A DNA stretch of 64,000 bases, taken from the NCBI GenBank assembly GCA_964057225.1, contig CAXKVF010000075.1, positions 744,001-808,000 on the forward strand, in the 5' to 3' direction. This document shows, in pieces, positions 36,001 through 64,000 of the stretch (the first letter of the stretch is position 1; every line of letters begins with the position of its first letter). The translations under genes were made by a program, and so were the position numbers. Under the pieces are notes generated by a model that had not been told where the DNA came from, ran no database searches, and saw only the letters and a program-made list of their open reading frames with translations. The DNA comes from Auanema rhodensis. Taxonomy: Eukaryota; Animalia; Nematoda.

Positions 36001-39000
36001 ACTTGGTATGTAACTCGCTTCACGTGAAAGATAAAGAGATGCGGTTCTCAAAATTAGATTCCCCATGTCCATATTAGTCTAAAAACAAATTTTTATTGAT
36101 ATTGGTTCATGGTAACCATGACTTTGAAATTTACGTGAACTTTAATTTATGCTAATTAAATGTACACGTGATGTGCACTTGGTATGTAACTCGCTTCACG
36201 TGAAAGATAAAGAGATGCGGTTTTCAAAATTAGATTCCCCATGTCCATATTAGTCTAAAAACAAATTTTTATTGATATTGGTTCATGGTAACCATGACTT
36301 TGAAATTTACGTGAACTTTAATTTATGCTAATTAAGTGTACACGTGATGTGCACTTGGTATGTAACTCGCTTCACGTGAAAGATACAGAGATGCGGTTTT
36401 CAAAATTAGATTCCCCATGTCCATATTAGTCTAAAAACAAATTTTTATTGATATTGGTGCATGGTAACCATGACTTTGAAATTTACGTGAACTTTAATTT
36501 ACGCTAATTAAATATACACGTGATGTGCACTTGGTATGTAACTCGCTTCACGTGAAAGATAAAGAGATGCGGTTTTCAAAATTAGATTCCCCATGTCCAT
36601 ATTAGTCTAAAAACAAATTTTTATTGATATTGGTTCATGGTAACCATGACTTTGAAATTTACGTGAACTTTAATTTATGCTAATTAAATGTACACGTGAT
36701 GTGCACTTGGTATGTAACTCGCTTCAAGTGAAAGATAAAGAGATGCGATTTTCAAAATTAGATTCCCCATGTCCATATTAGTCTAAAAACAAATTTTTAT
36801 TGATATTGGTTCATGGTAACCATGACTTTGAAATTTACGTGAACTTTAATTTATGCTAATTAAATGTACACGTGATTTGCACTTGGTATGTAACTCGCTT
36901 CACGTGAAAGATAAAGAGATGCGGTTTTCAAAATTAGATTCCCCATGTCCATATTAGTCTAAAAACAAATTTTTATTGATATTGGTGCATGGTAACCATG
37001 ACTTTGAAATTTACGTGAACTTTAATTTATGCTAATTAAATGTACACGTGATGTGCACTTCGTATGTAACTCGCTTCACGTGAAAGATAAAGAGATGCGG
37101 TTTTCAAAATTAGATTCCCCATGTCCATATTAGTCTAAAAACAAATTTTTATTGATATTGGTTCATGGTAACCATGACTTTGAAATTTACGTGAACTTTA
37201 ATTTATGCTAATTAAATGTACACGTGATGTGCACTTGGTATGTAACTCGCTTCACGTGAAAGATAAAGAGATGCGGTTTTCAAAATTAGATTCCCCATGT
37301 CCATATTAGTCTAAAAACAAATTTTTATTGATATTGGTTCATGGTAACCATGACTTTGAAATTTACGTGAACTTTAATTTATGCTAATTAAATGTACACG
37401 TGATGTGCACTTGGTATGTAACTCGCTTCACGTGAAAGATAAAGAGATGCGGTTTTCAAAATTAGATTCCCCATGTCCATATTAGTCTAAAAACAAATTT
37501 TTATTGATATTGGTTCATGGTAACCATGACTTTGAAATTTACGTGAACTTTAATTTATGCTAATTAAATGTACACGTGATGTGCACTTCGTATGTAACTC
37601 GCTTCACGTGAAAGATAAAGAGATGCGGTTTTCAAAATTAGATTCCCCATGTCCATATTAGTCTAAAAACAAATTTTTATTGATATTGGTTCATGGTAAC
37701 CATGACTTTGAAATTTACGTGAACTTTAATTTATGCTAATTAAATGTACACGTGATGTGCACTTGGTATGTAACTCGCTTCACGTGAAAGATAAAGAGAT
37801 GCGGTTTTCAAAATTAGATTCCCCATGTCCATATTAGTCTAAAAACAAATTTTTATTGATATTGGTTCATGGTAACCATGACTTTGAAATTTACGTGAAC
37901 TTTAATTTATGCTAATTAAATGTACACGTGATGTGCACTTGGTATGTAACTCGCTTCACGTGAAAGATAAAGAGATGCGGTTTTCAAAATTAGATTCCCC
38001 ATGTCCATATTAGTCTAAAAACAAATTTTTATTGATATTGGTTCATGGTAACCATGACTTTGAAATTTACGTGAACTTTAATTTATGCTAATTAAGTGTA
38101 CACGTGATGTGCACTTGGTATGTAACTCGCTTCACGTGAAAGATACAGAGATGCGGTTTTCAAAATTAGATTCCCCATGTCCATATTAGTCTAAAAACAA
38201 ATTTTTATTGATATTGGTGCATGGTAACCGTGACTTTGAAATTTACGTGAACTTTAATTTATGCTAATTAAATATACACGTGATGTGCACTTGGTATGTA
38301 ACTCGCTTCACGTGAAAGATAAAGAGATGCGGTTTTCAAAATTAGATTCCCCATGTCCATATTAGTCTAAAAACAAATTTTTATTGATATTGGTTCATGG
38401 TAACCATGACTTTGAAATTTACGTGAACTTTAATTTATGCTAATTAAATGTACACGTGATGTGCACTTGGTATGTAACTCGCTTCACGTGAAAGATAAAG
38501 AGATGCGGTTTTCAAAATTAGATTCCCCATGTCCATATTAGTCTAAAAACAAATTTTTATTGATATTGGTGCATGGTAACCATGACTTTGAAATTTACGT
38601 GAACTTTAATTTATGCTAATTAAATGTACACGTGATGTGCACTTGGTATGTAACTCGCTTCACGTGAAAGATAAAGAGATGCGGTTTTCAAAATTAGATT
38701 CCCCATGTCCATATTAGTCTAAAAACAAATTTTTATTGATATTGGTTCATGGTAACCATGACTTTGAAATTTACGTGAACTTTAATTTATGCTAATTAAA
38801 TGTACACGTGATGTGCACTTGGTGTGTAACTCGCTTCACGTGAAAGATAAAGAGATGCGGTTTTCAAAATTAGATTCCCCATGTCCATATTAGTCTAAAA
38901 ACAAATTTTTATTGATATTGCTTCATGGTAACCATGACTTTGAAATTTACGTGAACTTTAATTTATGCTAATTAAATGTACACGTAATGTGCACTTGGTA

Positions 39001-42000
39001 TGTAACTCGCTTCACGTGAAAGATAAAGAGATGCGGTTTTCAAAATTAGATTCCCCATGTCCATATTAGTCTAAAAACAAATTTTTATTGATATTGGTTC
39101 ATGGTAACCATGACTTTGAAATTTACGTGAACTTTAATTTATGCTAATTAAATGTACACGTGATGTGCACTTGGTATGTAACTCGCTTCACGTGAAAGAT
39201 AAAGAGATGCGGTTTTCAAAATTAGATTCCCCATGTCCATATTAGTCTAAAAACAAATTTTTATTGATATTGGTGCATGGTAACCATGACTTTGAAATTT
39301 ACGTGAACTTTAATTTATGCTAATTAAATGTACACGTGATGTGCATTTGGTATGTAACTCGCTTCACGTGAAAGATAAAGAGATGCGGTTTTCAAAATTA
39401 GATTCCCCATGTCCATATTAGTCTAAAAACAAATTTTTATTGATATTGCTTCATGGTAACCATGACTTTGAAATTTACGTGAACTTTAATTTATGCTAAT
39501 TAAATGTACACGTGATGTGCACTTGGTATGTAACTCGCTTCACGTGAAAGATAAAGAGATGCGGTTTTCAAAATTAGATCCCCCATGTCCATATTAGACT
39601 AAAAACAAATTTTTATTGATATTGGTGCATGGTAACCATGACTTTGAAATTTACGTGAACTTTAATTTATGCTAATTAAATGTACACGTGATGTGCACTT
39701 GGTATGTAACTCGCTTCACGTGAAAGATAAAGAGATGCGGTTTTCAAAATTAGATTCCCCATGTCCATATTAGTCTAAAAACAAATTTTTATTGATATTG
39801 GTGCATGGTAACCATGACTTTGAAATTTACGTGAACTTTAATTTATGCTAATTAAATGTACACGTGATGTGCACTTGGTATGTAACTCGCTTCACGTGAA
39901 AGATAAAGAGATGCGGTTTTCAAAATTAGATTCCCCATGTCCATATTAGTCTAAAAACAAATTTTTATTGATATTGGTGCATGGTAACCATGACTTTGAA
40001 ATTTACGTGAACTTTAATTTATGCTAATTAAATGTACACGTGATGTGCACTTGGTATGTAACTCGCTTCACGTGAAAGATAAAGAGATGCGGTTTTCAAA
40101 ATTAGATTCCCCATGTCCATATTAGTCTAAAAACAAATTTTTATTGATATTGGTTCATGGTAACCATGACTTTGAAATTTACGTGAACTTTAATTTATGC
40201 TAATTAAATGTACACGTGATGTGCACTTGGTATGTAACTCGCTTCACGTGAAAGATAAAGAGATGCGGTTTTCAAAATTAGATTCCCCATGTCCATATTA
40301 GTCTAAAAACAAATTTTTATTGATATTGCTTCATGGTAACCATGACTTTGAATTTTACGTGAACTTTAATTTATGCTAATTAAATGTACACGTGATGTGC
40401 ATTTGGTATGTAACTCGCTTCACGTGAAAGATAAAGAGATGCGGTTTTCAAAATTAGATTCCCCATGTCCATATTAGTCTAAAAACAAATTTTTATTGAT
40501 ATTGGTTCATGGTAACCATGACTTTGAAATTTACGTGAACTTTAATTTATGCTAATTAAATGTACACGTGATGTGCACTTGGTATGTAACTCGCTTCACG
40601 TGAAAGATAAAGAGATGCGGTTTTCAAAATTAGATTCCCCATGTCCATATTAGTCTAAAAACAAATTTTTATTGATATTGCTTCATGGTAACCATGACTT
40701 TGAAATTTACGTGAACTTTAATTTATGCTAATTAAATGTACACGTGATGTGCACTTGGTATGTAACTCGCTTCACGTGAAAGATAAAAAGATGCGGTTTT
40801 CAAAATTAGATTCCACATGTCCATATTAGTCTAAAAACAAATTTTTATTGATATTGGTTCATGGTAACCATGACTTTGAAATTTACGTGAACTTTAATTT
40901 ATGCTAATTAAATGTACACGTGATGTGCACTTGGTATGTAACTCGCTTCACGTGAAAGATAAAGAGATGCGGTTTTCAAAATTAGATTCCCCATGTCCAT
41001 ATTAGTCTAAAAACAAATTTTTATTGATATTGGTTCATGGTAACCATGACTTTGAAATTTACGTGAACTTTAATTTATGCTAATTAAATGTACACGTGAT
41101 GTGCACTTGGTATGTAACTCGCTTCACGTGAAAGATAAAGAGATGCGGTTTTCAAAATTAGATTCCCCATGTCCATATTAGTCTAAAAACAAATTTTTAT
41201 TGATATTGGTTCATGGTAACCATGACTTTGAAATTTACGTGAACTTTAATTTATGCTAATTAAGTGTACACGTGATGTGCACTTGGTATGTAACTCGCTT
41301 CACGTGAAAGATACAGAGATGCGGTTTTCAAAATTAGATTCCCCATGTCCATATTAGTCTAAAAACAAATTTTTATTGATATTGGTGCATGGTAACCATG
41401 ACTTTGAAATTTACGTGAACTTTAATTTATGCTAATTAAGTGTACACGTGATGTGCACTTGGTATGTAACTCGCTTCACGTGAAAGATACAGAGATGCGG
41501 TTTTCAAAATTAGATTCCCCATGTCCATATTAGTCTAAAAACAAATTTTTATTGATATTGGTGCATGGTAACCATGACTTTGAAATTTACGTGAACTTTA
41601 ATTTATGCTAATTAAATATACACGTGATGTGCACTTGGTATGTAACTCGCTTCACGTGAAAGATAAAGAGATGCGGTTTTCAAAATTAGATTCCCCATGT
41701 CCATATTAGTCTAAAAACAAATTTTTATTGATATTGGTTCATGGTAACCATGACTTTGAAATTTACGTGAACTTTAATTTATGCTAATTAAATGTACACG
41801 TGATGTGCACTTGGTATGTAACTCGCTTCACGTGAAAGATAAAGAGATGCGGTTTTCAAAATTAGATTCCCCATGTCCATATTAGTCTAAAAACAAATTT
41901 TTATTGATATTGGTGCATGGTAACCATGACTTTGAAATTTACGTGAACTTTAATTTATGCTAATTAAATGTACACGTGATGTGCACTTGGTATGTAACTC

Positions 42001-43920
42001 GCTTCACGTGAAAGATAAAGAGATGCGGTTTTCAAAATTAGATCCCCCATGTCCATATTAGACTAAAAACAAATTTTTATTGATATTGGTGCATGGTAAC
42101 CATGACTTTGAAATTTACGTGAACTTTAATTTATGCTAATTAAATGTACACGTGATGTGCACTTGGTATGTAACTCGCTTCACGTGAAAGATAAAGAGAT
42201 GCGGTTTTCAAAATTAGATTCCCCATGTCCATATTAGTCTAAAAACAAATTTTTATTGATATTGGTTCATGGTAACCATGACTTTGAAATTTACGTGAAC
42301 TTTAATTTATGCTAATTAAGTGTACACGTGATGTGCACTTGGTATGTAACTCGCTTCACGTGAAAGATACAGAGATGCGGTTTTCAAAATTAGATTCCCC
42401 ATGTCCATATTAGTCTAAAAACAAATTTTTATTGATATTGGTGCATGGTAACCATGACTTTGAAATTTACGTGAACTTTAATTTATGCTAATTAAATATA
42501 CACGTGATGTGCACTTGGTATGTAACTCGCTTCACGTGAAAGATAAAGAGATGCGGTTTTCAAAATTAGATTCCCCATGTCCATATTAGTCTAAAAACAA
42601 ATTTTTATTGATATTGGTTCATGGTAACCATGACTTTGAAATTTACGTGAACTTTAATTTATGCTAATTAAATGTACACGTGATGTGCACTTGGTATGTA
42701 ACTCGCTTCACGTGAAAGATAAAGAGATGCGGTTTTCAAAATTAGATTCCCCATGTCCATATTAGTCTAAAAACAAATTTTTATTGATATTGGTGCATGG
42801 TAACCATGACTTTGAAATTTACGTGAACTTTAATTTATGCTAATTAAATGTACACGTGATGTGCACTTGGTATGTAACTCGCTTCACGTGAAAGATAAAG
42901 AGATGCGGTTTTCAAAATTAGATTCCCCATGTCCATATTAGTCTAAAAACAAATTTTTATTGATATTGGTTCATGGTAACCATGACTTTGAAATTTACGT
43001 GAACTTTAATTTATGCTAATTAAATGTACACGTGATGTGCACTTGGTATGTAACTCGCTTCACGTGAAAGATAAAGAGATGCGGTTTTCAAAATTAGATT
43101 CCCCATGTCCATATTAGTCTAAAAACAAATTTTTATTGATATTGCTTCATGGTAACCATGACTTTGAAATTTACGTGAACTTTAATTTATGCTAATTAAA
43201 TGTACACGTGATGTGCACTTGGTATGTAACTCGCTTCACGTGAAAGATAAAAAGATGCGGTTTTCAAAATTAGATTCCCCATGTCCATATTAGTCTAAAA
43301 ACAAATTTTTATTGATATTGGTTCATGGTAACCATGACTTTGAAATTTACGTGAACTTTAATTTATGCTAATTAAATGTACACGTGATGTGCACTTGGTA
43401 TGTAACTCGCTTCACGTGAAAGATAAAGAGATGCGGTTTTCAAAATTAGATTCCCCATGTCCATATTAGTCTAAAAACAAATTTTTATTGATATTGGTTC
43501 ATGGTAACCATGACTTTGAAATTTACGTGAACTTTAATTTATGCTAATTAAATGTACACGTGATGTGCACTTGGTATGTAACTCGCTTCACGTGAAAGAT
43601 AAAGAGATGCGGTTTTCAAAATTAGATTCCCCATGTCCATATTAGTCTAAAAACAAATTTTTATTGATATTGGTTCATGGTAACCATGACTTTGAAATTT
43701 ACGTGAACTTTAATTTATGCTAATTAAATGTACACGTGATGTGCACTTGGTATGTAACTCGCTTCACGTGAAAGATAAAGAGATGCGGTTTTCAAAATTA
43801 GATTCCCCATGTCCATATTAGTCTAAAAACAAATTTTTATTGATATTGGTTCATGGTAACCATGACTTTGAAATTTACGTGAACTTTAATTTATGCTAAT
43901 TAAGTGTACACGTGATGTGC
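1..43920 (+). repeat. 176-bp tandem satellite array, left block (~250 monomers; continues beyond window start)
   Basis: CTAAAAACAAATTTTTATTG recurs at 1, 177, 353, ... (period 176). Monomers differ by about 0-3 substitutions and rare 1-bp deletions (near 8980 and 10210). Monomer GC is ~56/176. Confidence 0.99.
43917..43920 (+). repeat. Left target-site duplication GTGC (or GTGCA to 43921)
   Basis: The empty site is GATGTGCACTTGG. The left flank ends GATGTGC(A) and the right flank starts GTGCACTTGG. Confidence 0.9.
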
Positions 43921-44397
43921 AGTCAAAAGACTGTATAATAAAAAAGAAAAAAAACAAAGAATAAAAGAATTTATTAGAAATTAGAAAAATAAAAGAGAGA
44001 CTTAAACTGATTAAAATATATCACAAATATCTTATATCAACAATTTTAGGTAAACAATTGATCTTATCACTAATCTTAGATGTGCATGCTTGATAATCTG
44101 ATTACGGTAGTTGATCTTGGCAACATGCCCAAAGTTGTAACTTTGTTAGAACTTGTCTAAATGAAATAAGAATGATATATTCGTGCTTGTCGTTGTAAGA
44201 CGAATTCAACTGTACTATATTCATGTAGTTAACTATATGTAGTTAAGTATGTGATTTTATATGATATAGGTTTTATCAATGTTTTACATACTTCTCAAGA
44301 TAATATAATGTTTAACGTACTCAACAGAGTGTTTGTGAATAACTTTACGTTATATAGCACATGAAACATAGGTGGGTAACTATAGCCAACTGCGACA
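43921..44397 (-). repeat. 3' LTR (477 bp)
   Basis: Direct repeat of 47487-47963, preceded on the minus strand by the PPT. The outer boundary is ambiguous by 1 bp (43921 or 43922). Confidence 0.95.
43970..43975 (-). terminator. Putative polyadenylation signal AATAAA in 3' LTR
   Basis: Plus-strand TTTATT ~50 bp from the LTR end, followed on the minus strand by a U-rich stretch. Confidence 0.55.
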
Positions 44398-47062
44398 TCC
44401 CCGTCCTACAAAAAATTCTCGTCCTCGAGAAGTAAAATCTCTTCATTAAAGGAAAAACTTTCACAGATACTATTTCCAATTGGTCAGGAATTTTGTATAG
44501 TAAGTCTGTTTGAACTTTTAAAGGTTTTTTGTTTTCCTCTAGTTCATTAATAAATGCAGAAGTGTTATATTCTGATATCACTCTGTACGGTCCTCGAAAA
44601 TCGAAAGCTTGTTTCTTATTCGGATCACCTCTTTTTTCAAAAGGTATTTTAATGAAAACTCGATCACTTATTTTTGGTGAATCGGATTTTTTCTCACTCT
44701 TTTTATCATAGTATGATTTAAACCTTTTTTTGGTTTTATCATTCCTATTTTTATTTTCTATTGAAACAATAGGAAGAGCCATAGCACTATTGCTAGGTCC
44801 ATTCATTCTCTTGTTTAGAAGATTTTTGAAAACCTTCTTAAATCCGTTCCTGACTCTAATAGGAACAGGTCGAACTTTCTGTCTGATTGGTTTTGTGACC
44901 ATATCAGTATGTGTTAGGTCGGCTTCATTTAGAGCAACCTGCACATTATTTTTAACTAACCCCAAATTAGGAGCTTTAAACTTTTGACTCTCAAAAGTTC
45001 GTTTATCCAATCGGTAAGAGTCCTGATGCTGTATTTCGCATTCGTGTTCAGGTTTTTCTCTCAAACTGATCTTTTTTATCGCTGGATTTGGCTCTATTGT
45101 TTCAAAACCAGATCTCCAGTGACCTATAAATTCTCCTGCCTTAATTATCACAGGGTTGTCCGTGTTATTATGTAAATTCACGGTTGATATATTATCTTTG
45201 ATGGGATATATTCCCGAAACTGCAACAGCAGTAAGAGCGTTAAAAAACATTTCTCTTTTTATTGAAATCGCGTCACAAGAAACTAACACTTGATTTTGCG
45301 AAAAAGGAGGTAAATACACTCTTTTTAAAGTCATTGCTTGAGTTTTATTGAACTTCAAGCATATGTCTAAAGAATTCAAACAATTTGTACCCAATATCAT
45401 TTGATTTTCTTTGTTTTTGCTGACTAAAAAGTCAACAATTGCCTCTTTGTGGTTTTCATCACACAAAACAGACATTCGCACGGCGCCAACAAAATGCATT
45501 TGATCACCTGATGCGTTAACTATGAACTTTTTATTAGTCCATGGTAATTCCACTATTCTTTCATCTGCGTTGATTTTTTTTTGTTTCAACGAATCGATTA
45601 CTCGAACTAGCAATGATGAACTGATGACCGAAATTTGCGATCCAGTATCTAGTAATGCATCATGCATATGGACTTGACATAAAGTCATTCTCCCTAATGC
45701 TGGTTTACCAAACAATGGGGGGTTTCTCAAATCACTTGAAGTGATTTGGATTGCTCGATTCCAACTCTCAGCTTTTCTGTTAATGCTGGGTGGTTCTCGA
45801 GGAGTATTAAGTCTACTTTCATTCTCTATTCTCTCATTTTGTCTTTTAAAACATACGTTTGCAGTATGTCCTTTTTTATTACAGTTCACACAAATAATTT
45901 CATTATTATTAGTGTTTCTCACTCTTCTCTCATCGGAGATATGTGGATAATGTTTCCGGCTCAAGTTTTGTTTCTGCTCGGATTCATTGGATTGATTGAT
46001 TGAACGAGTTAACTTATTTCGTTCACATCTGAGGGCGATTTGTTTTACTTTTTCGTAAATTTCTTCGTCCTCCTCATCCTCTATTTTTTCAAGGATGGAA
46101 ACTCCACAAGAACAATTACAAAGTTCTTGGTACAGTTTATTTGCTCTTTCGAACGATAATAAACCAGGAATTAAATCTGGATTAGCCAGTTGAGTCAGTT
46201 TTTCTAACTCATCGCAGTAATTTACTAACGACTGGGATCTATTCCATTTCAAACTTTTCAAGTTTTCAGTAGCCTGCATTCTTCCCTGTCTTTGTGAAAC
46301 GGTTGACTCTCTACGTAAACTGTTCACTATGACATCTAAGGAACTTTGCTTTATGGCTTCAGGTAACTCTCTATAGCGATTTCTGATCTCGCCTTGGAGT
46401 TTATTGATGAATAAAAGTTTTTTTTCACGTTGAGAAAAAACATCATCTGGGTATTTATAGTTAAATCGTTCTGTGAAATCAACGAATTCACTATACGATC
46501 CACCCTTATAAGCCTCAACCTCAGGTAGTAACTGGGTTTTCATGAGTTTTGCAATATCGTAAAAGGACTTACCCTGATAACTGCACTCCTGGCTGTAAAG
46601 TTCGTTCTTTCTTGCTGAGCTTTTCAGCTGTAAAGAAGAAAAGGATTTATTCAGTTTAGAATTTACTAACGAACCTTTTTCACTATCTGTAATTGACAGA
46701 TTCATAAATTTTTCATCGGTTACTTGTTCAACCTGTAAAAAATCATGTTTAACATTATGATTAATCAAATTTTCAATTTTAATCAAAACATTATCATTGT
46801 TAGAATCACAGATGTTGTGGATCTGATTTAACAAATCAATCTCTTTTTGAAAACTTTTTATTTCAGAACTAGAGATTTTTAAATTCTTAGCTATTTTAGC
46901 TAGATTTTTCTCGGCTTCGACTCTTGGTCTACAACCGGTTTTAGTATGATTTAAAATCAAACTTTGAGCAAAAGATAAAATGTTATCTATATTACTCTCA
47001 AATTTATCAAAATTAAAAGGTAGTCTTACCTCGTTCATTTCGATATCCAGTTCCTCACTCAT
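44345..47062 (-). CDS. 905-aa Gag-protease polyprotein with internally deleted pol (RT N-terminal stub fused to integrase C-terminal GPY/F region)
   Basis: CCHC zinc knuckle CVNCNKKGHTANVC (45851-45892); protease ALLDTGSQIS (DTG at 45641-45649); RT-start-like PIRQKVRPVP...PSNSAMALPIV (~44750-44890); integrase tail KSYYDKK...DRVFIK...FRGPYRV (GPY at 44585-44593). No YxDD, RNase H, HHCC or DD35E motif. Confidence 0.92.
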   Translation of the reverse strand: MSEELDIEMNEVRLPFNFDKFESNIDNILSFAQSLILNHTKTGCRPRVEAEKNLAKIAKNLKISSSEIKSFQKEIDLLNQIHNICDSNNDNVLIKIENLINHNVKHDFLQVEQVTDEKFMNLSITDSEKGSLVNSKLNKSFSSLQLKSSARKNELYSQECSYQGKSFYDIAKLMKTQLLPEVEAYKGGSYSEFVDFTERFNYKYPDDVFSQREKKLLFINKLQGEIRNRYRELPEAIKQSSLDVIVNSLRRESTVSQRQGRMQATENLKSLKWNRSQSLVNYCDELEKLTQLANPDLIPGLLSFERANKLYQELCNCSCGVSILEKIEDEEDEEIYEKVKQIALRCERNKLTRSINQSNESEQKQNLSRKHYPHISDERRVRNTNNNEIICVNCNKKGHTANVCFKRQNERIENESRLNTPREPPSINRKAESWNRAIQITSSDLRNPPLFGKPALGRMTLCQVHMHDALLDTGSQISVISSSLLVRVIDSLKQKKINADERIVELPWTNKKFIVNASGDQMHFVGAVRMSVLCDENHKEAIVDFLVSKNKENQMILGTNCLNSLDICLKFNKTQAMTLKRVYLPPFSQNQVLVSCDAISIKREMFFNALTAVAVSGIYPIKDNISTVNLHNNTDNPVIIKAGEFIGHWRSGFETIEPNPAIKKISLREKPEHECEIQHQDSYRLDKRTFESQKFKAPNLGLVKNNVQVALNEADLTHTDMVTKPIRQKVRPVPIRVRNGFKKVFKNLLNKRMNGPSNSAMALPIVSIENKNRNDKTKKRFKSYYDKKSEKKSDSPKISDRVFIKIPFEKRGDPNKKQAFDFRGPYRVISEYNTSAFINELEENKKPLKVQTDLLYKIPDQLEIVSVKVFPLMKRFYFSRTRIFCRTGMSQLAIVTHLCFMCYIT
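44398..44407 (-). promoter_or_regulatory. Polypurine tract (plus-strand primer)
   Basis: Minus strand AGGACGGGGA abuts the TGT start of the 3' LTR and has a T6 tract 3 nt upstream. Confidence 0.75.
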
Positions 47063-47093
47063 GATGGAGATATAGGCAATGACTGTTTGTCAA

Positions 47094-47100
47094 CTGGAAA
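47094..47100 (-). promoter_or_regulatory. Putative nematode-type 3' splice / SL trans-splice acceptor TTTCCAG
   Basis: Minus strand TTTTATTTCCAG ends 31 nt upstream of the gag ATG and follows an AU-rich leader. Confidence 0.4.
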
Positions 47101-47471
47101 TAAAATTATTAGTTTTCTATACGAAAAAATAATTTAAAATATTGTCAAAAAAATTCTATACGAACAATGACAAAAAATTTTGATTTCTTCTCGAAATCAA
47201 AAGTGAAAGTTTCAACTCTCTCAAGTTTCTCCGAAAAAAAATTCTGTTAACACCTAATCAGTGTTTAGCAAAAATTTTTTTTTTTCCTCTTTTTTTTTTT
47301 TTTTCACAAAAAATTTTATGAAAAAAAAAAAAAAAAAAAAATTCAGAAAAATCGGAAAAACCCTATACGGGAGAGTTGTGACTAAATCACCAAGAGCTAT
47401 ACGCTCAAAAATAGGTTAAGAAACTATACGTTTCCCTATTTAACAAAAAATACAATCAATCGAGCAGAGAA

Positions 47472-47486
47472 CCGGTTCGGCCCCCA
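47472..47486 (-). promoter_or_regulatory. Primer-binding site, tRNA-Pro type
   Basis: Minus strand TGGGGGCCGAACCGG directly after the 5' LTR. It is complementary to ...CCGGTTCGGCCC-CCA, the tRNA-Pro 3' end I recall from C. elegans (not database-checked). Confidence 0.85.
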
Positions 47487-47963
47487 AGTCAAAAGACTGT
47501 ATAATAAAAAAGAAAAAAAACAAAGAATAAAAGAATTTATTAGAAATTAGAAAAATAAAAGAGAGACTTAAACTGATTAAAATATATCACAAATATCTTA
47601 TATCAACAATTTTAGGTAAACAATTGATCTTATCACTAATCTTAGATGTGCATGCTTGATAATCTGATTACGGTAGTTGATCTTGGCAACATGCCCAAAG
47701 TTGTAACTTTGTTAGAACTTGTCTAAATGAAATAAGAATGATATATTCGTGCTTGTCGTTGTAAGACGAATTCAACTGTACTATATTCATGTAGTTAACT
47801 ATATGTAGTTAAGTATGTGATTTTATATGATATAGGTTTTATCAATGTTTTACATACTTCTCAAGATAATATAATGTTTAACGTACTCAACAGAGTGTTT
47901 GTGAATAACTTTACGTTATATAGCACATGAAACATAGGTGGGTAACTATAGCCAACTGCGACA
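47487..47963 (-). repeat. 5' LTR (477 bp)
   Basis: Plus strand AGTCAAAAGACTG...GCCAACTGCGACA, matching 43921-44397 with no mismatch seen by eye. The minus strand begins TGTCGCAG and is followed directly by the PBS. The inner boundary is ambiguous by 1 bp. Confidence 0.95.
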
Positions 47964-47967
47964 GTGC
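47964..47967 (+). repeat. Right target-site duplication GTGC (or GTGCA to 47968)
   Basis: Follows the LTR end ...GCGACA and duplicates 43917-43920. Confidence 0.9.
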
Positions 47968-50900
47968 ACTTGGTATGTAACTCGCTTCACGTGAAAGATA
48001 CAGAGATGCGGTTTTCAAAATTAGATTCCCCATGTCCATATTAGTCTAAAAACAAATTTTTATTGATATTGGTGCATGGTAACCATGACTTTGAAATTTA
48101 CGTGAACTTTAATTTATGCTAATTAAATATACACGTGATGTGCACTTGGTATGTAACTCGCTTCACGTGAAAGATAAAGAGATGCGGTTTTCAAAATTAG
48201 ATTCCCCATGTCCATATTAGTCTAAAAACAAATTTTTATTGATATTGGTTCATGGTAACCATGACTTTGAAATTTACGTGAACTTTAATTTATGCTAATT
48301 AAATGTACACGTGATGTGCACTTGGTATGTAACTCGCTTCACGTGAAAGATAAAGAGATGCGGTTTTCAAAATTAGATTCCCCATGTCCATATTAGTCTA
48401 AAAACAAATTTTTATTGATATTGGTGCATGGTAACCATGACTTTGAAATTTACGTGAACTTTAATTTATGCTAATTAAATGTACACGTGATGTGCACTTG
48501 GTATGTAACTCGCTTCACGTGAAAGATAAAGAGATGCGGTTTTCAAAATTAGATTCCCCATGTCCATATTAGTCTAAAAACAAATTTTTATTGATATTGG
48601 TTCATGGTAACCATGACTTTGAAATTTACGTGAACTTTAATTTATGCTAATTAAATGTACACGTGATGTGCACTTGGTGTGTAACTCGCTTCACGTGAAA
48701 GATAAAGAGATGCGGTTTTTAAAATTAGATTCCCCATGTCCATATTAGTCTAAAAACAAATTTTTATTGATATTGCTTCATGGTAACCATGACTTTGAAA
48801 TTTACGTGAACTTTAATTTATGCTAATTAAATGTACACGTGATGTGCACTTGGTATGTAACTCGCTTCACGTGAAAGATAAAGAGATGCGGTTTTCAAAA
48901 TTAGATTCCCCATGTCCATATTAGTCTAACAACAAATTTTTATTGATATTGGTTCATGGTAACCATGACTTTGAAATTTACGTGAACTTTAATTTATGCT
49001 AATTAAATGTACACGTGATGTGCACTTGGTATGTAACTCGCTTCACGTGAAAGATAAAGAGATGCGGTTTTCAAAATTAGATTGCCCATGTCCATATTAG
49101 TCTAAAAACAAATTTTTATTGATATTGGTGCATGGTAACCATGACTTTGAAATTTACGTGAACTTTAATTTATGCTAATTAAATGTACACGTGATGTGCA
49201 CTTGGTATGTAACTCGCTTCACGTGAAAGATAAAGAGATGCGGTTTTCATAATTAGATCCCCCATGTCCATATTAGTCTAAAAACAAATTTTTATTGATA
49301 TTGGTGCATGGTAACCATGACTTTGAAATTTACGTGAACTTTAATTTATGCTAATTAAATGTACACGTGATGTGCACTTGGTATGTAACTCGCTTCACGT
49401 GAAAGATAAAGAGATGCGGTTTTCAAAATTAGATCCCCCATGTCCATATTAGACTAAAAACAAATTTTTATTGATATTGGTGCATGGTAACCATGACTTT
49501 GAAATTTACGTGAACTTTAATTTATGCTAATTAAATGTACACGTGATGTGCACTTGGTATGTAACTCGCTTCACGTGAAAGATAAAGAGATGCGGTTTTC
49601 AAAATTAGATTCCCCATGTCCATATTAGTCTAAAAACAAATTTTTATTGATATTGGTGCATGGTAACCATGACTTTGAAATTTACGTGAACTTTAATTTA
49701 TGCTAATTAAATATACACGTGATGTGCACTTGGTATGTAACTCGCTTCACGTGAAAGATAAAGAGATGCGGTTTTCAAAATTAGATTCCCCATGTCCATA
49801 TTAGTCTAAAAACAAATTTTTATTGATATTGGTGCATGGTAACCATGACTTTGAAATTTACGTGAACTTTAATTTATGCTAATTAAATATACACGTGATG
49901 TGCACTTGGTATGTAACTCGCTTCACGTGAAAGATAAAGAGATGCGGTTTTCAAAATTAGATTCCCCATGTCCATATTAGTCTAAAAACAAATTTTTATT
50001 GATATTGGTTCATGGTAACCATGACTTTGAAATTTACGTGAACTTTAATTTATGCTAATTAAATGTACACGTGATGTGCACTTGGTATGTAACTCGCTTC
50101 ACGTGAAAGATAAAGAGATGCGGTTTTCAAAATTAGATTCCCCATGTCCATATTAGTCTAAAAACAAATTTTTATTGATATTGGTGCATGGTAACCATGA
50201 CTTTGAAATTTACGTGAACTTTAATTTATGCTAATTAAATGTACACGTGATGTGCACTTGGTATGTAACTCGCTTCACGTGAAAGATAAAGAGATGCGGT
50301 TTTCAAAATTAGATTCCCCATGTCCATATTAGTCTAAAAACAAATTTTTATTGATATTGGTTCATGGTAACCATGACTTTGAAATTTACGTGAACTTTAA
50401 TTTATGCTAATTAAATGTACACGTGATGTGCACTTGGTGTGTAACTCGCTTCACGTGAAAGATAAAGAGATGCGGTTTTTAAAATTAGATTCCCCATGTC
50501 CATATTAGTCTAAAAACAAATTTTTATTGATATTGCTTCATGGTAACCATGACTTTGAAATTTACGTGAACTTTAATTTATGCTAATTAAATGTACACGT
50601 GATGTGCACTTGGTATGTAACTCGCTTCACGTGAAAGATAAAGAGATGCGGTTTTCAAAATTAGATTCCCCATGTCCATATTAGTCTAAAAACAAATTTT
50701 TATTGATATTGGTTCATGGTAACCATGACTTTGAAATTTACGTGAACTTTAATTTATGCTAATTAAATGTACACGTGATGTGCACTTGGTATGTAACTCG
50801 CTTCACGTGAAAGATAAAGAGATGCGGTTTTCAAAATTAGATTGCCCATGTCCATATTAGTCTAAAAACAAATTTTTATTGATATTGGTGCATGGTAACC

Positions 50901-53900
50901 ATGACTTTGAAATTTACGTGAACTTTAATTTATGCTAATTAAATGTACACGTGATGTGCACTTGGTATGTAACTCGCTTCACGTGAAAGATAAAGAGATG
51001 CGGTTTTCATAATTAGATCCCCCATGTCCATATTAGTCTAAAAACAAATTTTTATTGATATTGGTGCATGGTAACCATGACTTTGAAATTTACGTGAACT
51101 TTAATTTATGCTAATTAAATGTACACGTGATGTGCACTTGGTATGTAACTCGCTTCACGTGAAAGATAAAGAGATGCGGTTTTCAAAATTAGATCCCCCA
51201 TGTCCATATTAGACTAAAAACAAATTTTTATTGATATTGGTGCATGGTAACCATGACTTTGAAATTTACGTGAACTTTAATTTATGCTAATTAAATGTAC
51301 ACGTGATGTGCACTTGGTATGTAACTCGCTTCACGTGAAAGATAAAGAGATGCGGTTTTCAAAATTAGATTCCCCATGTCCATATTAGTCTAAAAACAAA
51401 TTTTTATTGATATTGGTGCATGGTAACCATGACTTTGAAATTTACGTGAACTTTAATTTATGCTAATTAAATGTACACGTGATGTGCACTTGGTATGTAA
51501 CTCGCTTCACGTGAAAGATAAAGAGATGCGGTTTTCAAAATTAGATTCCCCATGTCCATATTAGTCTAAAAACAAATTTTTATTGATATTGGTGCATGGT
51601 AACCATGACTTTGAAATTTACGTGAACTTTAATTTATGCTAATTAAATGTACACGTGATGTGCACTTGGTATGTAACTCGCTTCACGTGAAAGATAAAGA
51701 GATGCGGTTTTCAAAATTAGATCCCTCATGTCCATATTAGTCTAAAAACAAATTTTTATTGATATTGGTGCATGGTAACCATGACTTTGAAATTTACGTG
51801 AACTTTAATTTATGCTAATTAAATGTACACGTGATGTGCACTTGGTATGTAACTCGCTTCACGTGAAAGATAAAGAGATGCGGTTTTCAAAATTAGATTC
51901 CCCATGTCCATATTAGTCTAAAAACAAATTTTTATTGATATTGGTGCATGGTAACCATGACTTTGAAATTTACGTGAACTTTAATTTATGCTAATTAAAT
52001 GTACACGTGATGTGCATTTGGTATGTAACTCGCTTCACGTGAAAGATAAAGAGATGCGGTTTTCAAAATTAGATTCCCCATGTCCATATTAGTCTAAAAA
52101 CAAATTTTTATTGATATTGGTTCATGGTAACCATGACTTTGAAATTTACGTGAACTTTAATTTATGCTAATTAAATGTACACGTGATGTGCACTTGGTAT
52201 GTAACTCGCTTCACGTGAAAGATAAAGAGATGCGGTTTTCAAAATTAGATTCCCCATGTCCATATTAGTCTAAAAACAAATTTTTATTGATATTGCTTCA
52301 TGGTAACCATGACTTTGAAATTTACGTGAACTTTAATTTATGCTAATTAAATGTACACGTGATGTGCACTTGGTATGTAACTCGCTTCACGTGAAAGATA
52401 AAAAGATGCGGTTTTCAAAATTAGATTCCCCATGTCCATATTAGTCTAAAAACAAATTTTTATTGATATTGGTTCATGGTAACCATGACTTTGAAATTTA
52501 CGTGAACTTTAATTTATGCTAATTAAATGTACACGTGATGTGCACTTGGTATGTAACTCGCTTCACGTGAAAGATAAAGAGATGGGTTTTCAAAATTAGA
52601 TTCCCCATGTCCATATTAGTCTAAAAACAAATTTTTATTGATTTTGGTTCATGGTAACCATGACTTTGAAATTTACGTGAACTTTAATTTATGCTAATTA
52701 AATGTACACGTGATGTGCACTTGGTATGTAACTCGCTTCACGTGAAAGATAAAGAGATGCGGTTTTCAAAATTAGATTCCCCATGTCCATATTAGTCTAA
52801 AAACAAATTTTTATTGATATTGGTTCATGGTAACCATGACTTTGAAATTTACGTGAACTTTAATTTATGCTAATTAAATGTACACGTGATGTGCACTTGG
52901 TATGTAACTCGCTTCACGTGAAAGATAAAGAGATGCGGTTTTCAAAATTAGATTCCACATGTCCATATTAGTCTAAAAACAAATTTTTATTGATATTGGT
53001 GCATGGTAACCATGACTTTGAAATTTACGTGAACTTTAATTTATGCTAATTAAATGTACACGTGATGTGCACTTGGTATGTAACTCGCTTCACGTGAAAG
53101 ATAAAGAGATGCGGTTTTCAAAATTAGATTCCCCATGTCCATATTAGTCTAAAAACAAATTTTTATTGATATTGGTTCATGGTAACCATGACTTTGAAAT
53201 TTACGTGAACTTTAATTTATGCTAATTAAATGTACACGTGATGTGCACTTGGTATGTAACTCGCTTCACGTGAAAGATAAAGAGATGCGGTTTTCAAAAT
53301 TAGATTCCCCATGTCCATATTAGTCTAAAAACAAATTTTTATTGATATTGGTTCATGGTAACCATGACTTTGAAATTTACGTGAACTTTAATTCATGCTA
53401 ATTAAATGTACACGTGATGTGCACTTGGTATGTAACTCGCTTCACGTGAAAGATAAAGAGATGCGGTTTTCACAATTAGATTCCCCATGTCCATATTAGT
53501 CTAAAAACAAATTTTTATTGATATTGGTGCATGGTAACCATGACTTTGAAATTTACGTAAACTTTAATTTATGCTAATTAAATGTACACGTGATGTGCAC
53601 TTGGTATGTAACTCGCTTCACGTGAAAGATAAAGAGATGCGGTTTTCAAAATTAGATTCCCCATGTCCATATTAGTCTAAAAACAAATTTTTATTGATAT
53701 TGCTTCATGGTAACCATGACTTTGAAATTTACTTGAACTTTAATTTATGCTAATTAAATGTACACGTGATGTGCACTTGGTATGTAACTCGCTTCACGTG
53801 AAAGATAAAGAGATGCGGTTTTCAAAATTAGATTCCCCATGTCCATATTAGTCTAAAAACAATTTTTTATTGATATTGGTTCATGGTAACCATGACTTTG

Positions 53901-62900: not shown

Positions 62901-64000
62901 ATTAAATGTACACGTGATGTGCACTTGGTATGTAACTCGCTTCGCGTGAAAGATAAAGAGATGCGGTTTTCAAAATTAGATGCCCCATGTCCATATTAGT
63001 CTAAAAACAAATTTTTATTGATATTGCTTCATGGTAACCATGACTTTGAAATTTACGTGAACTTTAATTTATGCTAATTAAATGTACACGTGATGTGCAC
63101 TTGGTATGTAACTCGCTTCACGTGAAAGATAAAGAGATGCGGTTTTCAAAATTAGATTCCCCATGTCCATATTAGTCTAAAAACAAATTTTTATTGATAT
63201 TAGTTCATGGTAACCATGACTTTCAAATTTACGTGAACTTTAATTTATGCTAATTAAATGTACACGTGATGTGCACTTGGTATGTAACTCGCTTCACGTG
63301 AAAGATAAAGAGATGCGGTTTTCAAAATTAGATTCCCCATGTCCATATTAGTCTAAAAACAAATTTTTATTGATATTGGTTCATGGTAACCATGACTTTG
63401 AAATTTACGTGAACTTTAATTTATGCTAATTAAATGTACACGTGATGTGCACTTGGTATGTAACTCGCTTCGCGTGAAAGATAAAGAGATGCGGTTTTCA
63501 AAATTAGATGCCCCATGTCCATATTAGTCTAAAAACAAATTTTTATTGATATTGCTTCATGGTAACCATGACTTTGAAATTTACGTGAACTTTAATTTAT
63601 GCTAATTAAATGTACACGTGATGTGCACTTGGTATGTAACTCGCTTCACGTGAAAGATAAAGAGATGCGGTTTTCAAAATTAGATTCCCCATGTCCATAT
63701 TAGTCTAAAAACAAATTTTTATTGATATTAGTTCGTGGTAACCATGACTTTCAAATTTACGTGAACTTTAATTTATGCTAATTAAATGTACACGTGATGT
63801 GCACTTGGTATGTAACTCGCTTCACGTGAAAGATAAAGAGATGCGGTTTTCAAAATTAGATTCCCCATGTCCATATTAGTCTAAAAACAAATTTTTATTG
63901 ATATTGCTTCATGGTAACCATGACTTTGAAATTTACGTGAACTTTAATTTATGCTAATTAAATGTACACGTGATGTGCACTTGGTATGTAACTCGCTTCA
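47964..64000 (+). repeat. 176-bp tandem satellite array, right block (~91 monomers; continues beyond window end)
   Basis: Resumes at GTGCACTTGGTATG directly after the LTR end, in the same orientation and register as the left block. Confidence 0.99.

What the first reader, a model, noticed from the sequence alone, without database searches (positions are those of the whole stretch)
43921..47963. Young non-autonomous LTR element with an intact Gag-PR ORF and no RT, RNase H or integrase core, inserted in a satellite array
Seen: apparently identical LTRs, a clean TSD, an intact PBS and PPT, and an uninterrupted 905-codon ORF, but none of the enzymes for reverse transcription or integration. The RT stub has drifted (PSNSAMALPIV where gypsy RTs have S-x-SPW-x-SPVV), although the LTR identity says this copy is recent. 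Known: gag-only or pol-deleted non-autonomous LTR elements are described, mostly in plants (e.g. TR-GAG). Inference: the deletion is old, and this is an established parasitic lineage that makes its own capsid and protease and borrows Pol from a helper. It may be an undescribed satellite-associated helper/passenger system in a probable nematode.
Basis: partly seen in the sequence, partly recalled or inferred. Interest (0 to 1): 0.85.

Follow-up and report, generated by a model that had tools for sequence, protein, structure and literature searches.

The report
Pol-deleted Cer1-like retrotransposon in nematode satellite
A very young copy of a nematode Cer1-type LTR retrotransposon that has lost its reverse transcriptase, RNase H and integrase core sits in a 176-bp satellite array; this kind of element is known, and one copy cannot show that it belongs to an established parasitic lineage.

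Summary
The window is one 176-bp satellite array, interrupted once at 43921-47963 by a 4,043-bp LTR element on the minus strand. It has two 477-bp LTRs that are 100% identical, a 4-bp target duplication, a PBS containing the published Cer1 tRNA-Pro PBS, a weak PPT and one 905-codon ORF.

Compared with an intact 2,191-aa relative, the ORF is Gag, zinc knuckle, protease, a dUTPase-fold domain and the first ~55 residues of RT. These are joined in frame to the integrase C-terminal domain. About 730 residues are missing (RT core, RNase H, integrase zinc and core domains). All relatives are clade V nematode elements at about 30% identity or less.

- **Old deletion:** moderate support. The copy keeps clade-conserved residues in Gag and protease as well as intact relatives do, but it is the worst of 29 sequences in the RT stub.
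- **Established lineage, helper, satellite preference:** untestable here. No second copy or parent was found in any searchable collection.
- **Look-alike proteins elsewhere:** apparent Gag-protease-integrase-tail proteins in other nematodes are gene-model artefacts.

In passing, the leader carries five covarying hairpins with an identical GUAUA loop.

The parts
1..43920 (+). 176-bp satellite array, left of the insertion
   Evidence: TRF period 176, 249.6 copies, 98% matches
43917..43920 (.). Left copy of the target-site duplication, GTGC on the + strand. A 5-bp reading (GTGCA, 43917-43921) is equally possible.
   Evidence: Junction sequences and the uninterrupted monomer GATGTGCACTTGG, seen 307 times. 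Phase arithmetic. Relatives have 4-bp duplications.
43921..44397 (-). 3' LTR, 477 bp, TGTCGC...TTTTGACT
   Evidence: 477/477 identical to the 5' LTR. TATATAA at LTR position 42 and AATAAA at position 423.
44398..44409 (-). Polypurine-like tract GTAGGACGGGGA, abutting the 3' LTR
   Evidence: Read from the sequence. A similar G-rich tract precedes the 3' LTR in L005, and a similar tract lies upstream of the presumed LTR in L001.
44345..47062 (-). Single 905-codon ORF: Gag, zinc knuckle, protease, dUTPase-fold domain, RT N-terminal stub, integrase C-terminal domain, 37-aa tail. The last 53 nt lie in the 3' LTR.
46007..46555 (-). Gag capsid-like region (aa 170-352)
   Evidence: Aligns to nematode Gag proteins. 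23/27 conserved columns are kept. Relative P0001 gives a sub-threshold match to Pfam Retrotrans_gag.
45851..45892 (-). CCHC zinc knuckle (aa 391-404)
   Evidence: Pattern match. It aligns to the zf-CCHC of P0001 and P0005.
45347..45685 (-). Aspartic protease (aa 460-572), with LLDTGS at 45638-45655 and ILGTN at 45383-45397
   Evidence: Weak Pfam gag-asp_proteas match, E 0.02. Motifs located. 26/34 conserved columns are kept.
45113..45340 (-). Conserved beta domain between protease and RT (aa ~575-650) with a dUTPase-like fold
   Evidence: Alignment A2. AlphaFold pLDDT above 90 over this stretch. 49 of the top 50 Foldseek PDB hits are dUTPases, E 0.02-0.09.
44747..44920 (-). RT N-terminal stub (aa 715-772), ending in the deletion junction (about aa 767-772, 44747-44764, in an A-rich run)
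   Evidence: Aligns to P0005 959-1012, just before its RVT_1 domain at 1008-1174. 15/30 conserved columns are kept.
44459..44746 (-). Integrase C-terminal domain remnant (aa 773-868, contains GPYRV)
   Evidence: Aligns to P0005 1742-1839, downstream of its rve core at 1549-1646. 20/31 conserved columns are kept.
47063..47471 (-). Leader between the PBS and the gag ATG. It holds five C(GUAUA)G hairpins at 47421-47433, 47394-47406, 47360-47372, 47153-47165 and 47114-47126, and a long U-run/A-run hairpin at 47341-47275.
   Evidence: Fold z-score -7.0. Stems of 3-7 bp. 95% of cells paired and covariation 1.10 against 0.23 in shuffles.
47472..47486 (-). Primer binding site TGGGGGCCGAACCGG
   Evidence: Contains the 14-nt Cer1 PBS complementary to C. 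elegans tRNA-Pro(TGG) (PMC3315495). Its first 8-10 nt are also found in L001, L005 and L006.
47487..47963 (-). 5' LTR, 477 bp
47964..47967 (.). Right copy of the target-site duplication (GTGC)
47964..64000 (+). 176-bp satellite array, right of the insertion, in the same phase

Best explanation
This is a recently integrated, internally deleted and therefore non-autonomous copy of a Cer1-like Ty3/gypsy LTR retrotransposon of a nematode.

Shown:
- Its single ORF encodes Gag, a CCHC nucleocapsid, an aspartic protease, a dUTPase-fold domain and the first ~55 residues of RT.
- These are fused in frame to the integrase C-terminal domain.
- RT core, RNase H and the integrase zinc and catalytic domains (about 730 residues) are absent.
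- All cis elements are present: identical LTRs, a tRNA-Pro PBS, a PPT-like tract and a structured leader.

Inferred mechanism:
- The element is transcribed from the 5' LTR, and its own Gag and protease build or join particles.
- RT, RNase H and integrase come in trans from an autonomous Cer1-like element in the same cell.
- tRNA-Pro primes at the PBS, and the helper's integrase makes the 4-bp duplication.

Inferred, with moderate support:
- The deletion is much older than this insertion, because the useless Pol remnants have diverged more than Gag and protease.
- The copy would then descend from a deleted lineage that has persisted or propagated, rather than being a one-off.
For: - Anatomy and clean insertion.
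- Deletion map: query aa 193-772 align to P0005 334-1012, and aa 769-863 to P0005 1742-1839. The missing interval in P0005 holds RVT_1, RT_RNaseH, Integrase_H2C2 and rve.
- Clade: the closest proteins are Ostertagia, Nippostrongylus, Ancylostoma, Cooperia, Haemonchus, Oesophagostomum and Caenorhabditis nigoni.
- PBS: it contains the Cer1 tRNA-Pro PBS.
- LTR ends and duplication: TGTCG...GACT and a 4-bp duplication match the C. nigoni full-length element L005.
- The clade is active elsewhere: L005 and L006 have 100% identical LTRs and intact ORFs of 2,362 and 2,194 aa.
- Older deletion: conserved columns kept are 58/73 in Gag, protease and linker against 15/30 in the RT stub (Fisher p = 0.004) and 20/31 in the integrase remnant. 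P0005, P0136 and P0152 show the opposite pattern, with Pol remnants more conserved than Gag.
Against: - There is only one copy. No sibling, parent or helper was found, so propagation of the deleted form is not shown.
- The stub test is small. Six of its 30 columns abut the junction, and without them p = 0.06.
- Conserved columns were defined mainly on strongylid elements that are only about 30% identical to this copy.
- The integrase remnant is not significantly decayed (p = 0.14), and the reading frame stays open through about 190 codons of supposedly useless sequence. That fits a young deletion, or else selection on this part.
- An intact ORF says nothing about selection, because identical LTRs leave no time for decay.
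Confidence: 0.55

Rival explanations
1. One-off deletion at birth. A full-length RNA of an autonomous Cer1-like element was packaged, and RT switched template between A-rich tracts during the reverse transcription that produced this very copy. The copy was dead on arrival, there is no lineage, and the unusual RT N-terminus is simply that of a divergent but functional parent.
For: - The junction lies in an A-rich run, a plausible site for template switching.
- Identical LTRs and an intact frame are expected for any new copy.
- No second copy is known.
- The integrase remnant is still well conserved.
- P0005, an uninterrupted 2,191-aa polyprotein, also departs from SPW, with Y in place of W.
Against: - A functional RT would need the stub's changes at positions that the four long comparison polyproteins keep, or replace only conservatively: II to MN, W to M, LV to SI.
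- The copy scores lowest of 29 sequences in this segment while being average or better in Gag and protease.
- An in-frame deletion has only a 1 in 3 prior chance.
Confidence: 0.25
2. Deletion in place. A full-length autonomous element inserted here by itself, and later lost its RT-to-integrase segment through a genomic deletion. No helper was ever needed.
For: The insertion signature (LTRs, duplication) is the same for an autonomous element. Satellite regions are prone to rearrangement.
Against: - LTR identity leaves little time for this.
- The deletion is exactly in frame, and the rest of the element is untouched.
- The decayed stub is unexplained, as in the first rival.
Confidence: 0.12
3. 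Domesticated Gag-protease gene of the host, not a mobile element.
For: The ORF is long and intact, and Gag and protease keep their conserved residues.
Against: It has identical LTRs, a target duplication, a PBS and a PPT, and it sits inside a satellite array. These are the marks of a fresh retrotransposition, not of a fixed host gene.
Confidence: 0.02

Closest known systems
Cer1 of Caenorhabditis elegans and Cer1-like Ty3/gypsy elements of nematodes
   Same: - A PBS directly after the 5' LTR that contains the 14-nt Cer1 sequence complementary to tRNA-Pro(TGG).
- A single open frame rather than separate gag and pol.
- LTR ends TGTCG...GACT and a 4-bp duplication, as in the C. nigoni element L005.
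- Gag, protease and integrase-tail homology to nematode polyproteins.
   Different: - It lacks RT core, RNase H and the integrase zinc and core domains, and is about 4.0 kb instead of about 7-9 kb.
- Protein identity to any relative is about 30% or less.
- Only 37 residues follow the integrase C-terminal domain, where intact relatives have 350-460.
- Homology to Cer1 Gag itself was not tested.
TR-GAG elements of plants (terminal-repeat retrotransposons with a GAG domain)
   Same: Non-autonomous LTR elements that keep a capsid gene and the cis signals but depend on a partner for Pol (my own knowledge; the term is used in PMC13570524).
   Different: TR-GAG elements keep gag only and are defined as multi-copy families in plants. 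This copy also keeps protease, a dUTPase-fold domain and Pol remnants, is in an animal, and is known from one copy.
IAP I-delta-1 and MusD/ETn of mouse (from my own knowledge, not checked here)
   Same: An internal in-frame deletion gives a fusion polyprotein, and the deleted form is mobilised in trans by full-length elements.
   Different: They are vertebrate endogenous retroviruses with different breakpoints, and their trans-mobilisation has been shown by experiment. Nothing of the sort is shown here.
Non-autonomous LTR retrotransposons annotated in Strongylida genomes (PMC13195028)
   Same: The same host group. That paper defines the category as LTR elements lacking at least one of its five domains: Gag, protease, reverse transcriptase, endonuclease, integrase.
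   Different: That category is a bulk annotation class of mostly degenerate copies. This copy is young and has an intact Gag-protease frame.

Membership tests
LTR retrotransposon, Ty3/gypsy (Metaviridae), Cer1-like clade | Two direct LTRs flanked by a short target-site duplication | tested here: met
   LTRs are 477/477 identical. The duplication is 4 bp, or 5 bp on the other reading, and the satellite phase is restored when the element is removed.
LTR retrotransposon, Ty3/gypsy (Metaviridae), Cer1-like clade | PBS complementary to tRNA-Pro(TGG) directly after the 5' LTR, as in Cer1 | tested here: met
   Window 47486-47473 equals the 14-nt Cer1 PBS quoted in PMC3315495. No tRNA gene of the host itself was available.
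LTR retrotransposon, Ty3/gypsy (Metaviridae), Cer1-like clade | Gag with CCHC knuckle and an aspartic protease with D-T/S-G | tested here: met
   Motifs located. Alignments to nematode Gag-protease proteins. The Pfam protease match is below its cut-off.
LTR retrotransposon, Ty3/gypsy (Metaviridae), Cer1-like clade | Pol order protease, RT, RNase H, integrase | tested here: inconclusive
   Only remnants are left. The RT N-terminus precedes the integrase C-terminus, which fits the order. Full-length relatives show the complete order.
LTR retrotransposon, Ty3/gypsy (Metaviridae), Cer1-like clade | Sequence homology to Cer1 Gag or Pol itself | not tested
   No Cer1 protein was returned by any tool. 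The nearest proxy is the C. nigoni polyprotein P0136, E 2e-11. A search from P0155 returned no C. elegans entry.
Autonomous LTR retrotransposon | Encodes RT, RNase H and an integrase catalytic core | tested here: not met
   No Pfam RT, RNase H or rve match. The interval P0005 1013-1741 has no counterpart. Only 3.1 kb lie between the LTRs, and the ORF fills about 2.7 kb of it.
Established non-autonomous LTR family (TR-GAG-like helper/passenger system) | Several copies at different loci sharing the same deletion junction | not testable with these tools
   There is no other copy in the window. The exact-product look-up and the protein and DNA searches found no close kin. The source assembly is not searchable here.
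Established non-autonomous LTR family (TR-GAG-like helper/passenger system) | An autonomous partner in the same genome with matching LTR ends, PBS and packaging region | not testable with these tools
   The best full-length relatives are about 30% identical and come from other species.
Established non-autonomous LTR family (TR-GAG-like helper/passenger system) | The deletion predates the copy (Pol remnants relaxed relative to Gag) | tested here: inconclusive
   Stub 15/30 against Gag, protease and linker 58/73, p = 0.004. Without the junction-proximal columns p = 0.06. The integrase remnant gives 20/31, p = 0.14.
TR-GAG in the strict sense | Gag is the only coding domain | tested here: not met
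   Protease, a dUTPase-fold domain and Pol remnants are also encoded.
Satellite-targeting retrotransposon | Insertions enriched in the satellite relative to its share of the genome | not testable with these tools
   One insertion in 60 kb of array, and no genome-wide data.

The most novel reading that the evidence does not exclude
The copy represents a long-lived parasitic sub-lineage of Cer1-like elements in an unsampled nematode. It makes its own capsid and protease. It carries its own packaging or dimerisation array, five hairpins with the same GUAUA loop. It keeps the integrase C-terminal domain under selection, for instance to ride into the helper's particles or to keep the frame open. 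It borrows RT and integrase from a helper, possibly with a preference for satellite DNA.
Probability: 0.25. Interest if true: 0.55.

Novelty: new member of a known kind. Interest (0 to 1): 0.3.

Why it matters
As it stands, this is a well-preserved example of a familiar process: an internally deleted LTR retrotransposon mobilised in trans. The clade (Cer1-like, tRNA-Pro primed) is already known from nematodes.

It would matter more if the assembly holds many copies with the same junction. That would be a clear animal counterpart of plant gag-retaining non-autonomous families. The reiterated leader hairpins would then be a candidate packaging signal open to testing.

The insertion also shows that a Cer1-like RT and integrase source was active very recently in this genome, and that the satellite array can take such insertions.

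Tried and rejected
- **Widespread Gag-protease-integrase-tail architecture in other nematodes.** Five database proteins (P0011, P0044, P0053, P0075, P0087) showed it in a domain map. tblastn of the full-length P0005 against the three loci I fetched (L002, L003, L004) found RT, RNase H and integrase coding sequence inside their predicted introns. Those three are gene-model artefacts of full-length, frameshifted copies; the loci of P0011 and P0075 were not fetched.
- **Search for siblings or a parent.** All came back empty or distant: exact-product look-up, word-indexed protein search, exhaustive HMMER search of 1.84 billion representatives (best about 30% identity), protein-guided scan of metagenome contigs, and exact LTR-PBS searches in metagenome and prokaryote genome contigs. 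An exact search with the satellite in prokaryote genome contigs was also empty.
- **Direct link to Cer1 Gag.** A search from the C. nigoni polyprotein returned no C. elegans protein.
- **Host tRNA-Pro.** No tRNA gene was found in the three nematode loci scanned.
- **Leader hairpins in relatives.** The L001 leader repeats a different motif (GTACGGA, five times) but has no significant fold (z 0.09). The L005 leader has no GUAUA hairpins.
- **Known families and structures.** Rfam gave no match in the element. The PDB sequence search gave nothing meaningful.
- **Satellite identity.** A literature search for a 176-bp nematode satellite found nothing relevant.
- **Second deletion after the integrase tail.** The tails of intact relatives are not homologous to one another, so this cannot be decided.


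Full report
**1. What is there.**

The whole window is one tandem array of a 176-bp, 32% G+C satellite, with 98% matches between monomers. It is interrupted once.

The repeat phase jumps by 4223 = 176 + 4047 across the interruption. That equals a 4,043-bp insert plus a 4-bp duplication. Removing the insert and one duplicate leaves monomers 98-100% identical to the array consensus.

The insert carries two 477-bp direct repeats, 43921-44397 and 47487-47963, identical at every position. No other copy or solo LTR is in the window.

The element is on the minus strand. On that strand the LTRs run TGTCGC...TTTTGACT. The flanking duplication is GCAC (GTGC on the plus strand). A reading with 476-bp LTRs and a 5-bp duplication fits the sequence equally. 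Two full-length relatives have unambiguous 4-bp duplications, so I take 4 bp.

**2. Cis elements.**

The PBS, TGGGGGCCGAACCGG (47486-47472), follows the 5' LTR directly. Dennis et al. 2012 (PMC3315495) report that TGGGGGCCGAACCG lies directly next to the Cer1 5' LTR. [quoted passage not shown] The window carries this 14-mer exactly.

Its first 8-10 nt also follow the LTR in three full-length relatives: L001, L005 (C. nigoni) and L006 (Ancylostoma ceylanicum). L005 additionally shares the LTR termini TGTCG...GACT.

The tract before the 3' LTR, GTAGGACGGGGA (44409-44398), is only weakly purine-rich. A similar tract precedes the 3' LTR in L005, and one lies upstream of the presumed LTR in L001.

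**3. The ORF.**

One ORF of 905 codons runs from 47062 to 44345. Its last 53 nt lie inside the 3' LTR.

Pfam sees only a sub-threshold protease match. An exhaustive HMMER search finds 337 relatives. Every one that carries a name is from a clade V nematode: Ostertagia, Nippostrongylus, Ancylostoma, Cooperia, Trichostrongylus, Haemonchus, Oesophagostomum or Caenorhabditis nigoni. None exceeds about 30% identity over long stretches.

The comparison that settles the architecture is with P0005, an uninterrupted 2,191-aa Gag-Pol from a 7.2-kb Logan unitig:
- Query aa 193-772 align to P0005 334-1012.
- Query aa 769-863 align to P0005 1742-1839.
- The interval between holds RVT_1 (1008-1174), the RNase H domains (1237-1372), the integrase zinc domain (1477-1535) and the integrase core (1549-1646).

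So about 730 residues are missing, and the two sides are joined in frame within an A-rich stretch coding ENKN (aa 769-772).

The encoded parts, in order:

| Part | Residues | Note |
|---|---|---|
| Gag capsid-like region | aa 170-352 | |
| CCHC knuckle | aa 391-404 | |
| Protease | aa 460-572 | DTG and ILG motifs |
| Conserved beta domain | aa ~575-650 | dUTPase-like fold |
| RT N-terminus | aa 715-772 | stub |
| Integrase C-terminal domain | aa 773-868 | contains GPYRV |
| Tail | aa 869-905 | unrelated sequence |

The element cannot reverse-transcribe or integrate by itself.

**4. Recent insertion.**

There are no differences in 477 bp. Assuming a C. elegans-like mutation rate of 2-3 x 10^-9 per site per generation (my own knowledge), the 95% upper bound is about 10^6 generations. 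This is an inference, and gene conversion between LTRs could mask a greater age.

Two consequences follow. The intact ORF is not evidence of selection. And some source of RT and integrase acted on this element recently, unless the deletion happened in place after insertion.

**5. Is the deletion older than the copy?**

I aligned each segment with all relatives that cover it. I then took the columns where at least 75% of the relatives agree, and counted how often a sequence has the consensus residue.

| Segment | Query | Comparison polyproteins |
|---|---|---|
| Gag | 23/27 | P0005 18, P0136 16, P0152 19 |
| Zinc knuckle and protease | 26/34 | P0005 26, P0136 16, P0152 31 |
| Linker | 9/12 | P0152 11 |
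| RT stub | 15/30 | P0005 23, P0136 21, P0116 26, P0152 28 |
| Integrase remnant | 20/31 | P0005 27, P0136 23, P0152 31 |

The query's stub value is the lowest of 29 sequences. Its departures are II to MN, W to M (the comparators have W or Y), LV to SI, and KKDG to NKN.

In P0005, P0136 and P0152 the Pol remnants are more conserved than Gag, as is usual for retroelements. The query shows the reverse. Stub against Gag, protease and linker gives Fisher p = 0.004.

The caveats are real:
- Six stub columns abut the junction and may belong to the event itself. Without them p = 0.06.
- The conserved columns come mostly from strongylid elements that are distant from the query.
- The integrase remnant is not significantly decayed (p = 0.14).
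- The frame has stayed open through about 190 post-linker codons.

I therefore rate 'old deletion, persisting lineage' at roughly 0.55.

**6. What could not be shown.**

No sibling, parent or helper exists in any searchable collection. Copy number, shared junctions, helper identity and satellite preference all remain untested.

A tempting shortcut failed. Five annotated nematode proteins appeared to have the same Gag-protease-integrase-tail layout. In the three loci I fetched, the predicted introns contain the RT, RNase H and integrase coding sequence. Those three are artefacts of gene prediction on frameshifted full-length copies.

**7. Mechanism proposed.**

Shown: the coding content and the cis elements described above.

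Inferred:
- Transcription starts from the 5' LTR. A TATATAA at LTR position 42 and an AATAAA at position 423 are present.
- The Gag-protease fusion is translated and assembles into particles with, or alongside, a helper's Gag-Pol.
- tRNA-Pro primes minus-strand synthesis.
- The helper's integrase makes a 4-bp staggered cut in the GTGCAC palindrome of the satellite monomer.

Rivals:
- A template-switch deletion during the very reverse transcription that made this copy (0.25).
- A genomic deletion in place after an autonomous insertion (0.12).
- Domestication (0.02).

**8. Comparison with what is known.**

The element belongs with the Cer1-like Ty3/gypsy elements of nematodes, by its PBS, LTR ends, duplication length, single frame and protein homology. 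Direct homology to Cer1 Gag itself was not tested.

It works like the gag-retaining non-autonomous elements of plants (TR-GAG) and like in-frame deleted mouse IAP elements. It is not a TR-GAG in the strict sense, because it keeps protease and more.

Non-autonomous LTR elements are already a recognised annotation class in strongylid genomes (PMC13195028).

Verdict: a new member of a known kind, of modest interest, unless the assembly shows a family.

**9. Things seen in passing.**

- **Leader hairpins.** The 409-nt leader folds far better than shuffles (z = -7.0). It carries five hairpins with the identical loop GUAUA closed by C-G, on stems of 3-7 bp that differ in sequence. Of the cells in a 4-bp stem model, 95% pair, and covariation is 1.10 against 0.23 in shuffles (0 of 500 shuffles reach it). 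The loop contains the self-complementary UAUA, so a role in RNA dimerisation or Gag binding is conceivable. That is speculation.
- **dUTPase-fold domain.** The domain between protease and RT is conserved across the clade and is predicted with pLDDT above 90. It matches dUTPases in 49 of the top 50 PDB hits, though only at E 0.02-0.09. By eye the catalytic motif-3 aspartate is not conserved.
- **Active relatives.** The C. nigoni and A. ceylanicum relatives have 100% identical LTRs and intact frames, so the clade is active or was so very recently.

**10. Limits kept.**

The report says where the element is broken, not how it could be restored. Two steps are referred.

Noticed in passing
window 47114-47433 (minus strand): hairpins at 47421-47433, 47394-47406, 47360-47372, 47153-47165 and 47114-47126: Five hairpins in the leader share the loop GUAUA closed by a C-G pair, on stems of different sequence (covarying). 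A sixth CGTATAG, in gag at 46497, has no stem. They may be a packaging or dimerisation signal. Rfam has no match.
   Followed up: yes
window 47275-47341 (minus strand): A run of about 21 U faces runs of 15 and 11 A in the leader. It is predicted to form one long A-U hairpin between the two groups of GUAUA hairpins.
   Followed up: partly
window 45113-45340 (minus strand; ORF aa ~575-650): The 'linker' between protease and RT is a domain conserved across the clade. It has a confidently predicted beta fold that matches trimeric dUTPases (49 of the top 50 PDB hits, weak E-values). The catalytic aspartate does not look conserved, and Pfam does not recognise the domain.
   Followed up: partly
L002 5985-10395, L003 3791-8795, L004 5365-8685: Three public gene models, in Oesophagostomum (P0044), Nippostrongylus (P0053) and Cooperia (P0087), look like Gag-protease-integrase-tail proteins. 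They splice out frameshifted RT, RNase H and integrase sequence as introns, so they are annotation artefacts and not deletion derivatives.
   Followed up: yes
L005 1480-11131 (C. nigoni) and L006 2215-10478 (A. ceylanicum): Full-length relatives with 100% identical LTRs (727 and 861 bp), 4-bp duplications (TCTT, TTTG), a TGGGGGCC PBS and intact single ORFs of 2,362 and 2,194 aa. The clade looks currently or very recently active in other nematodes.
   Followed up: partly
L001 95-258: The leader of the Logan full-length relative repeats GTACGGA five times, but its predicted fold is no better than shuffles. A reiterated leader motif may be a shared habit of the clade, with the sequence differing by lineage.
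   Followed up: partly
window 47094-47100 (minus strand): TTTCCAG, close to the nematode 3' splice-acceptor consensus, lies 31 nt upstream of the gag ATG. It could be a cis- or trans-splice acceptor giving a leaderless mRNA.
   Followed up: no
window 1-43920 and 47964-64000: The 176-bp monomer contains several palindromes: CACGTG twice, GTGCAC once and CATGGTAACCATG once. The element inserted inside the GTGCAC palindrome. No published match to the satellite was found.
   Followed up: partly
window 44348-44458 (minus strand); P0005 1844-2191, P0152 1735-2194, P0155 1992-2362: Intact relatives carry 350-460 residues after the integrase C-terminal domain, and these tails are not homologous to one another. 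The window element has only 37 residues there and reads through the PPT into the LTR. A second deletion is possible but cannot be decided.
   Followed up: partly
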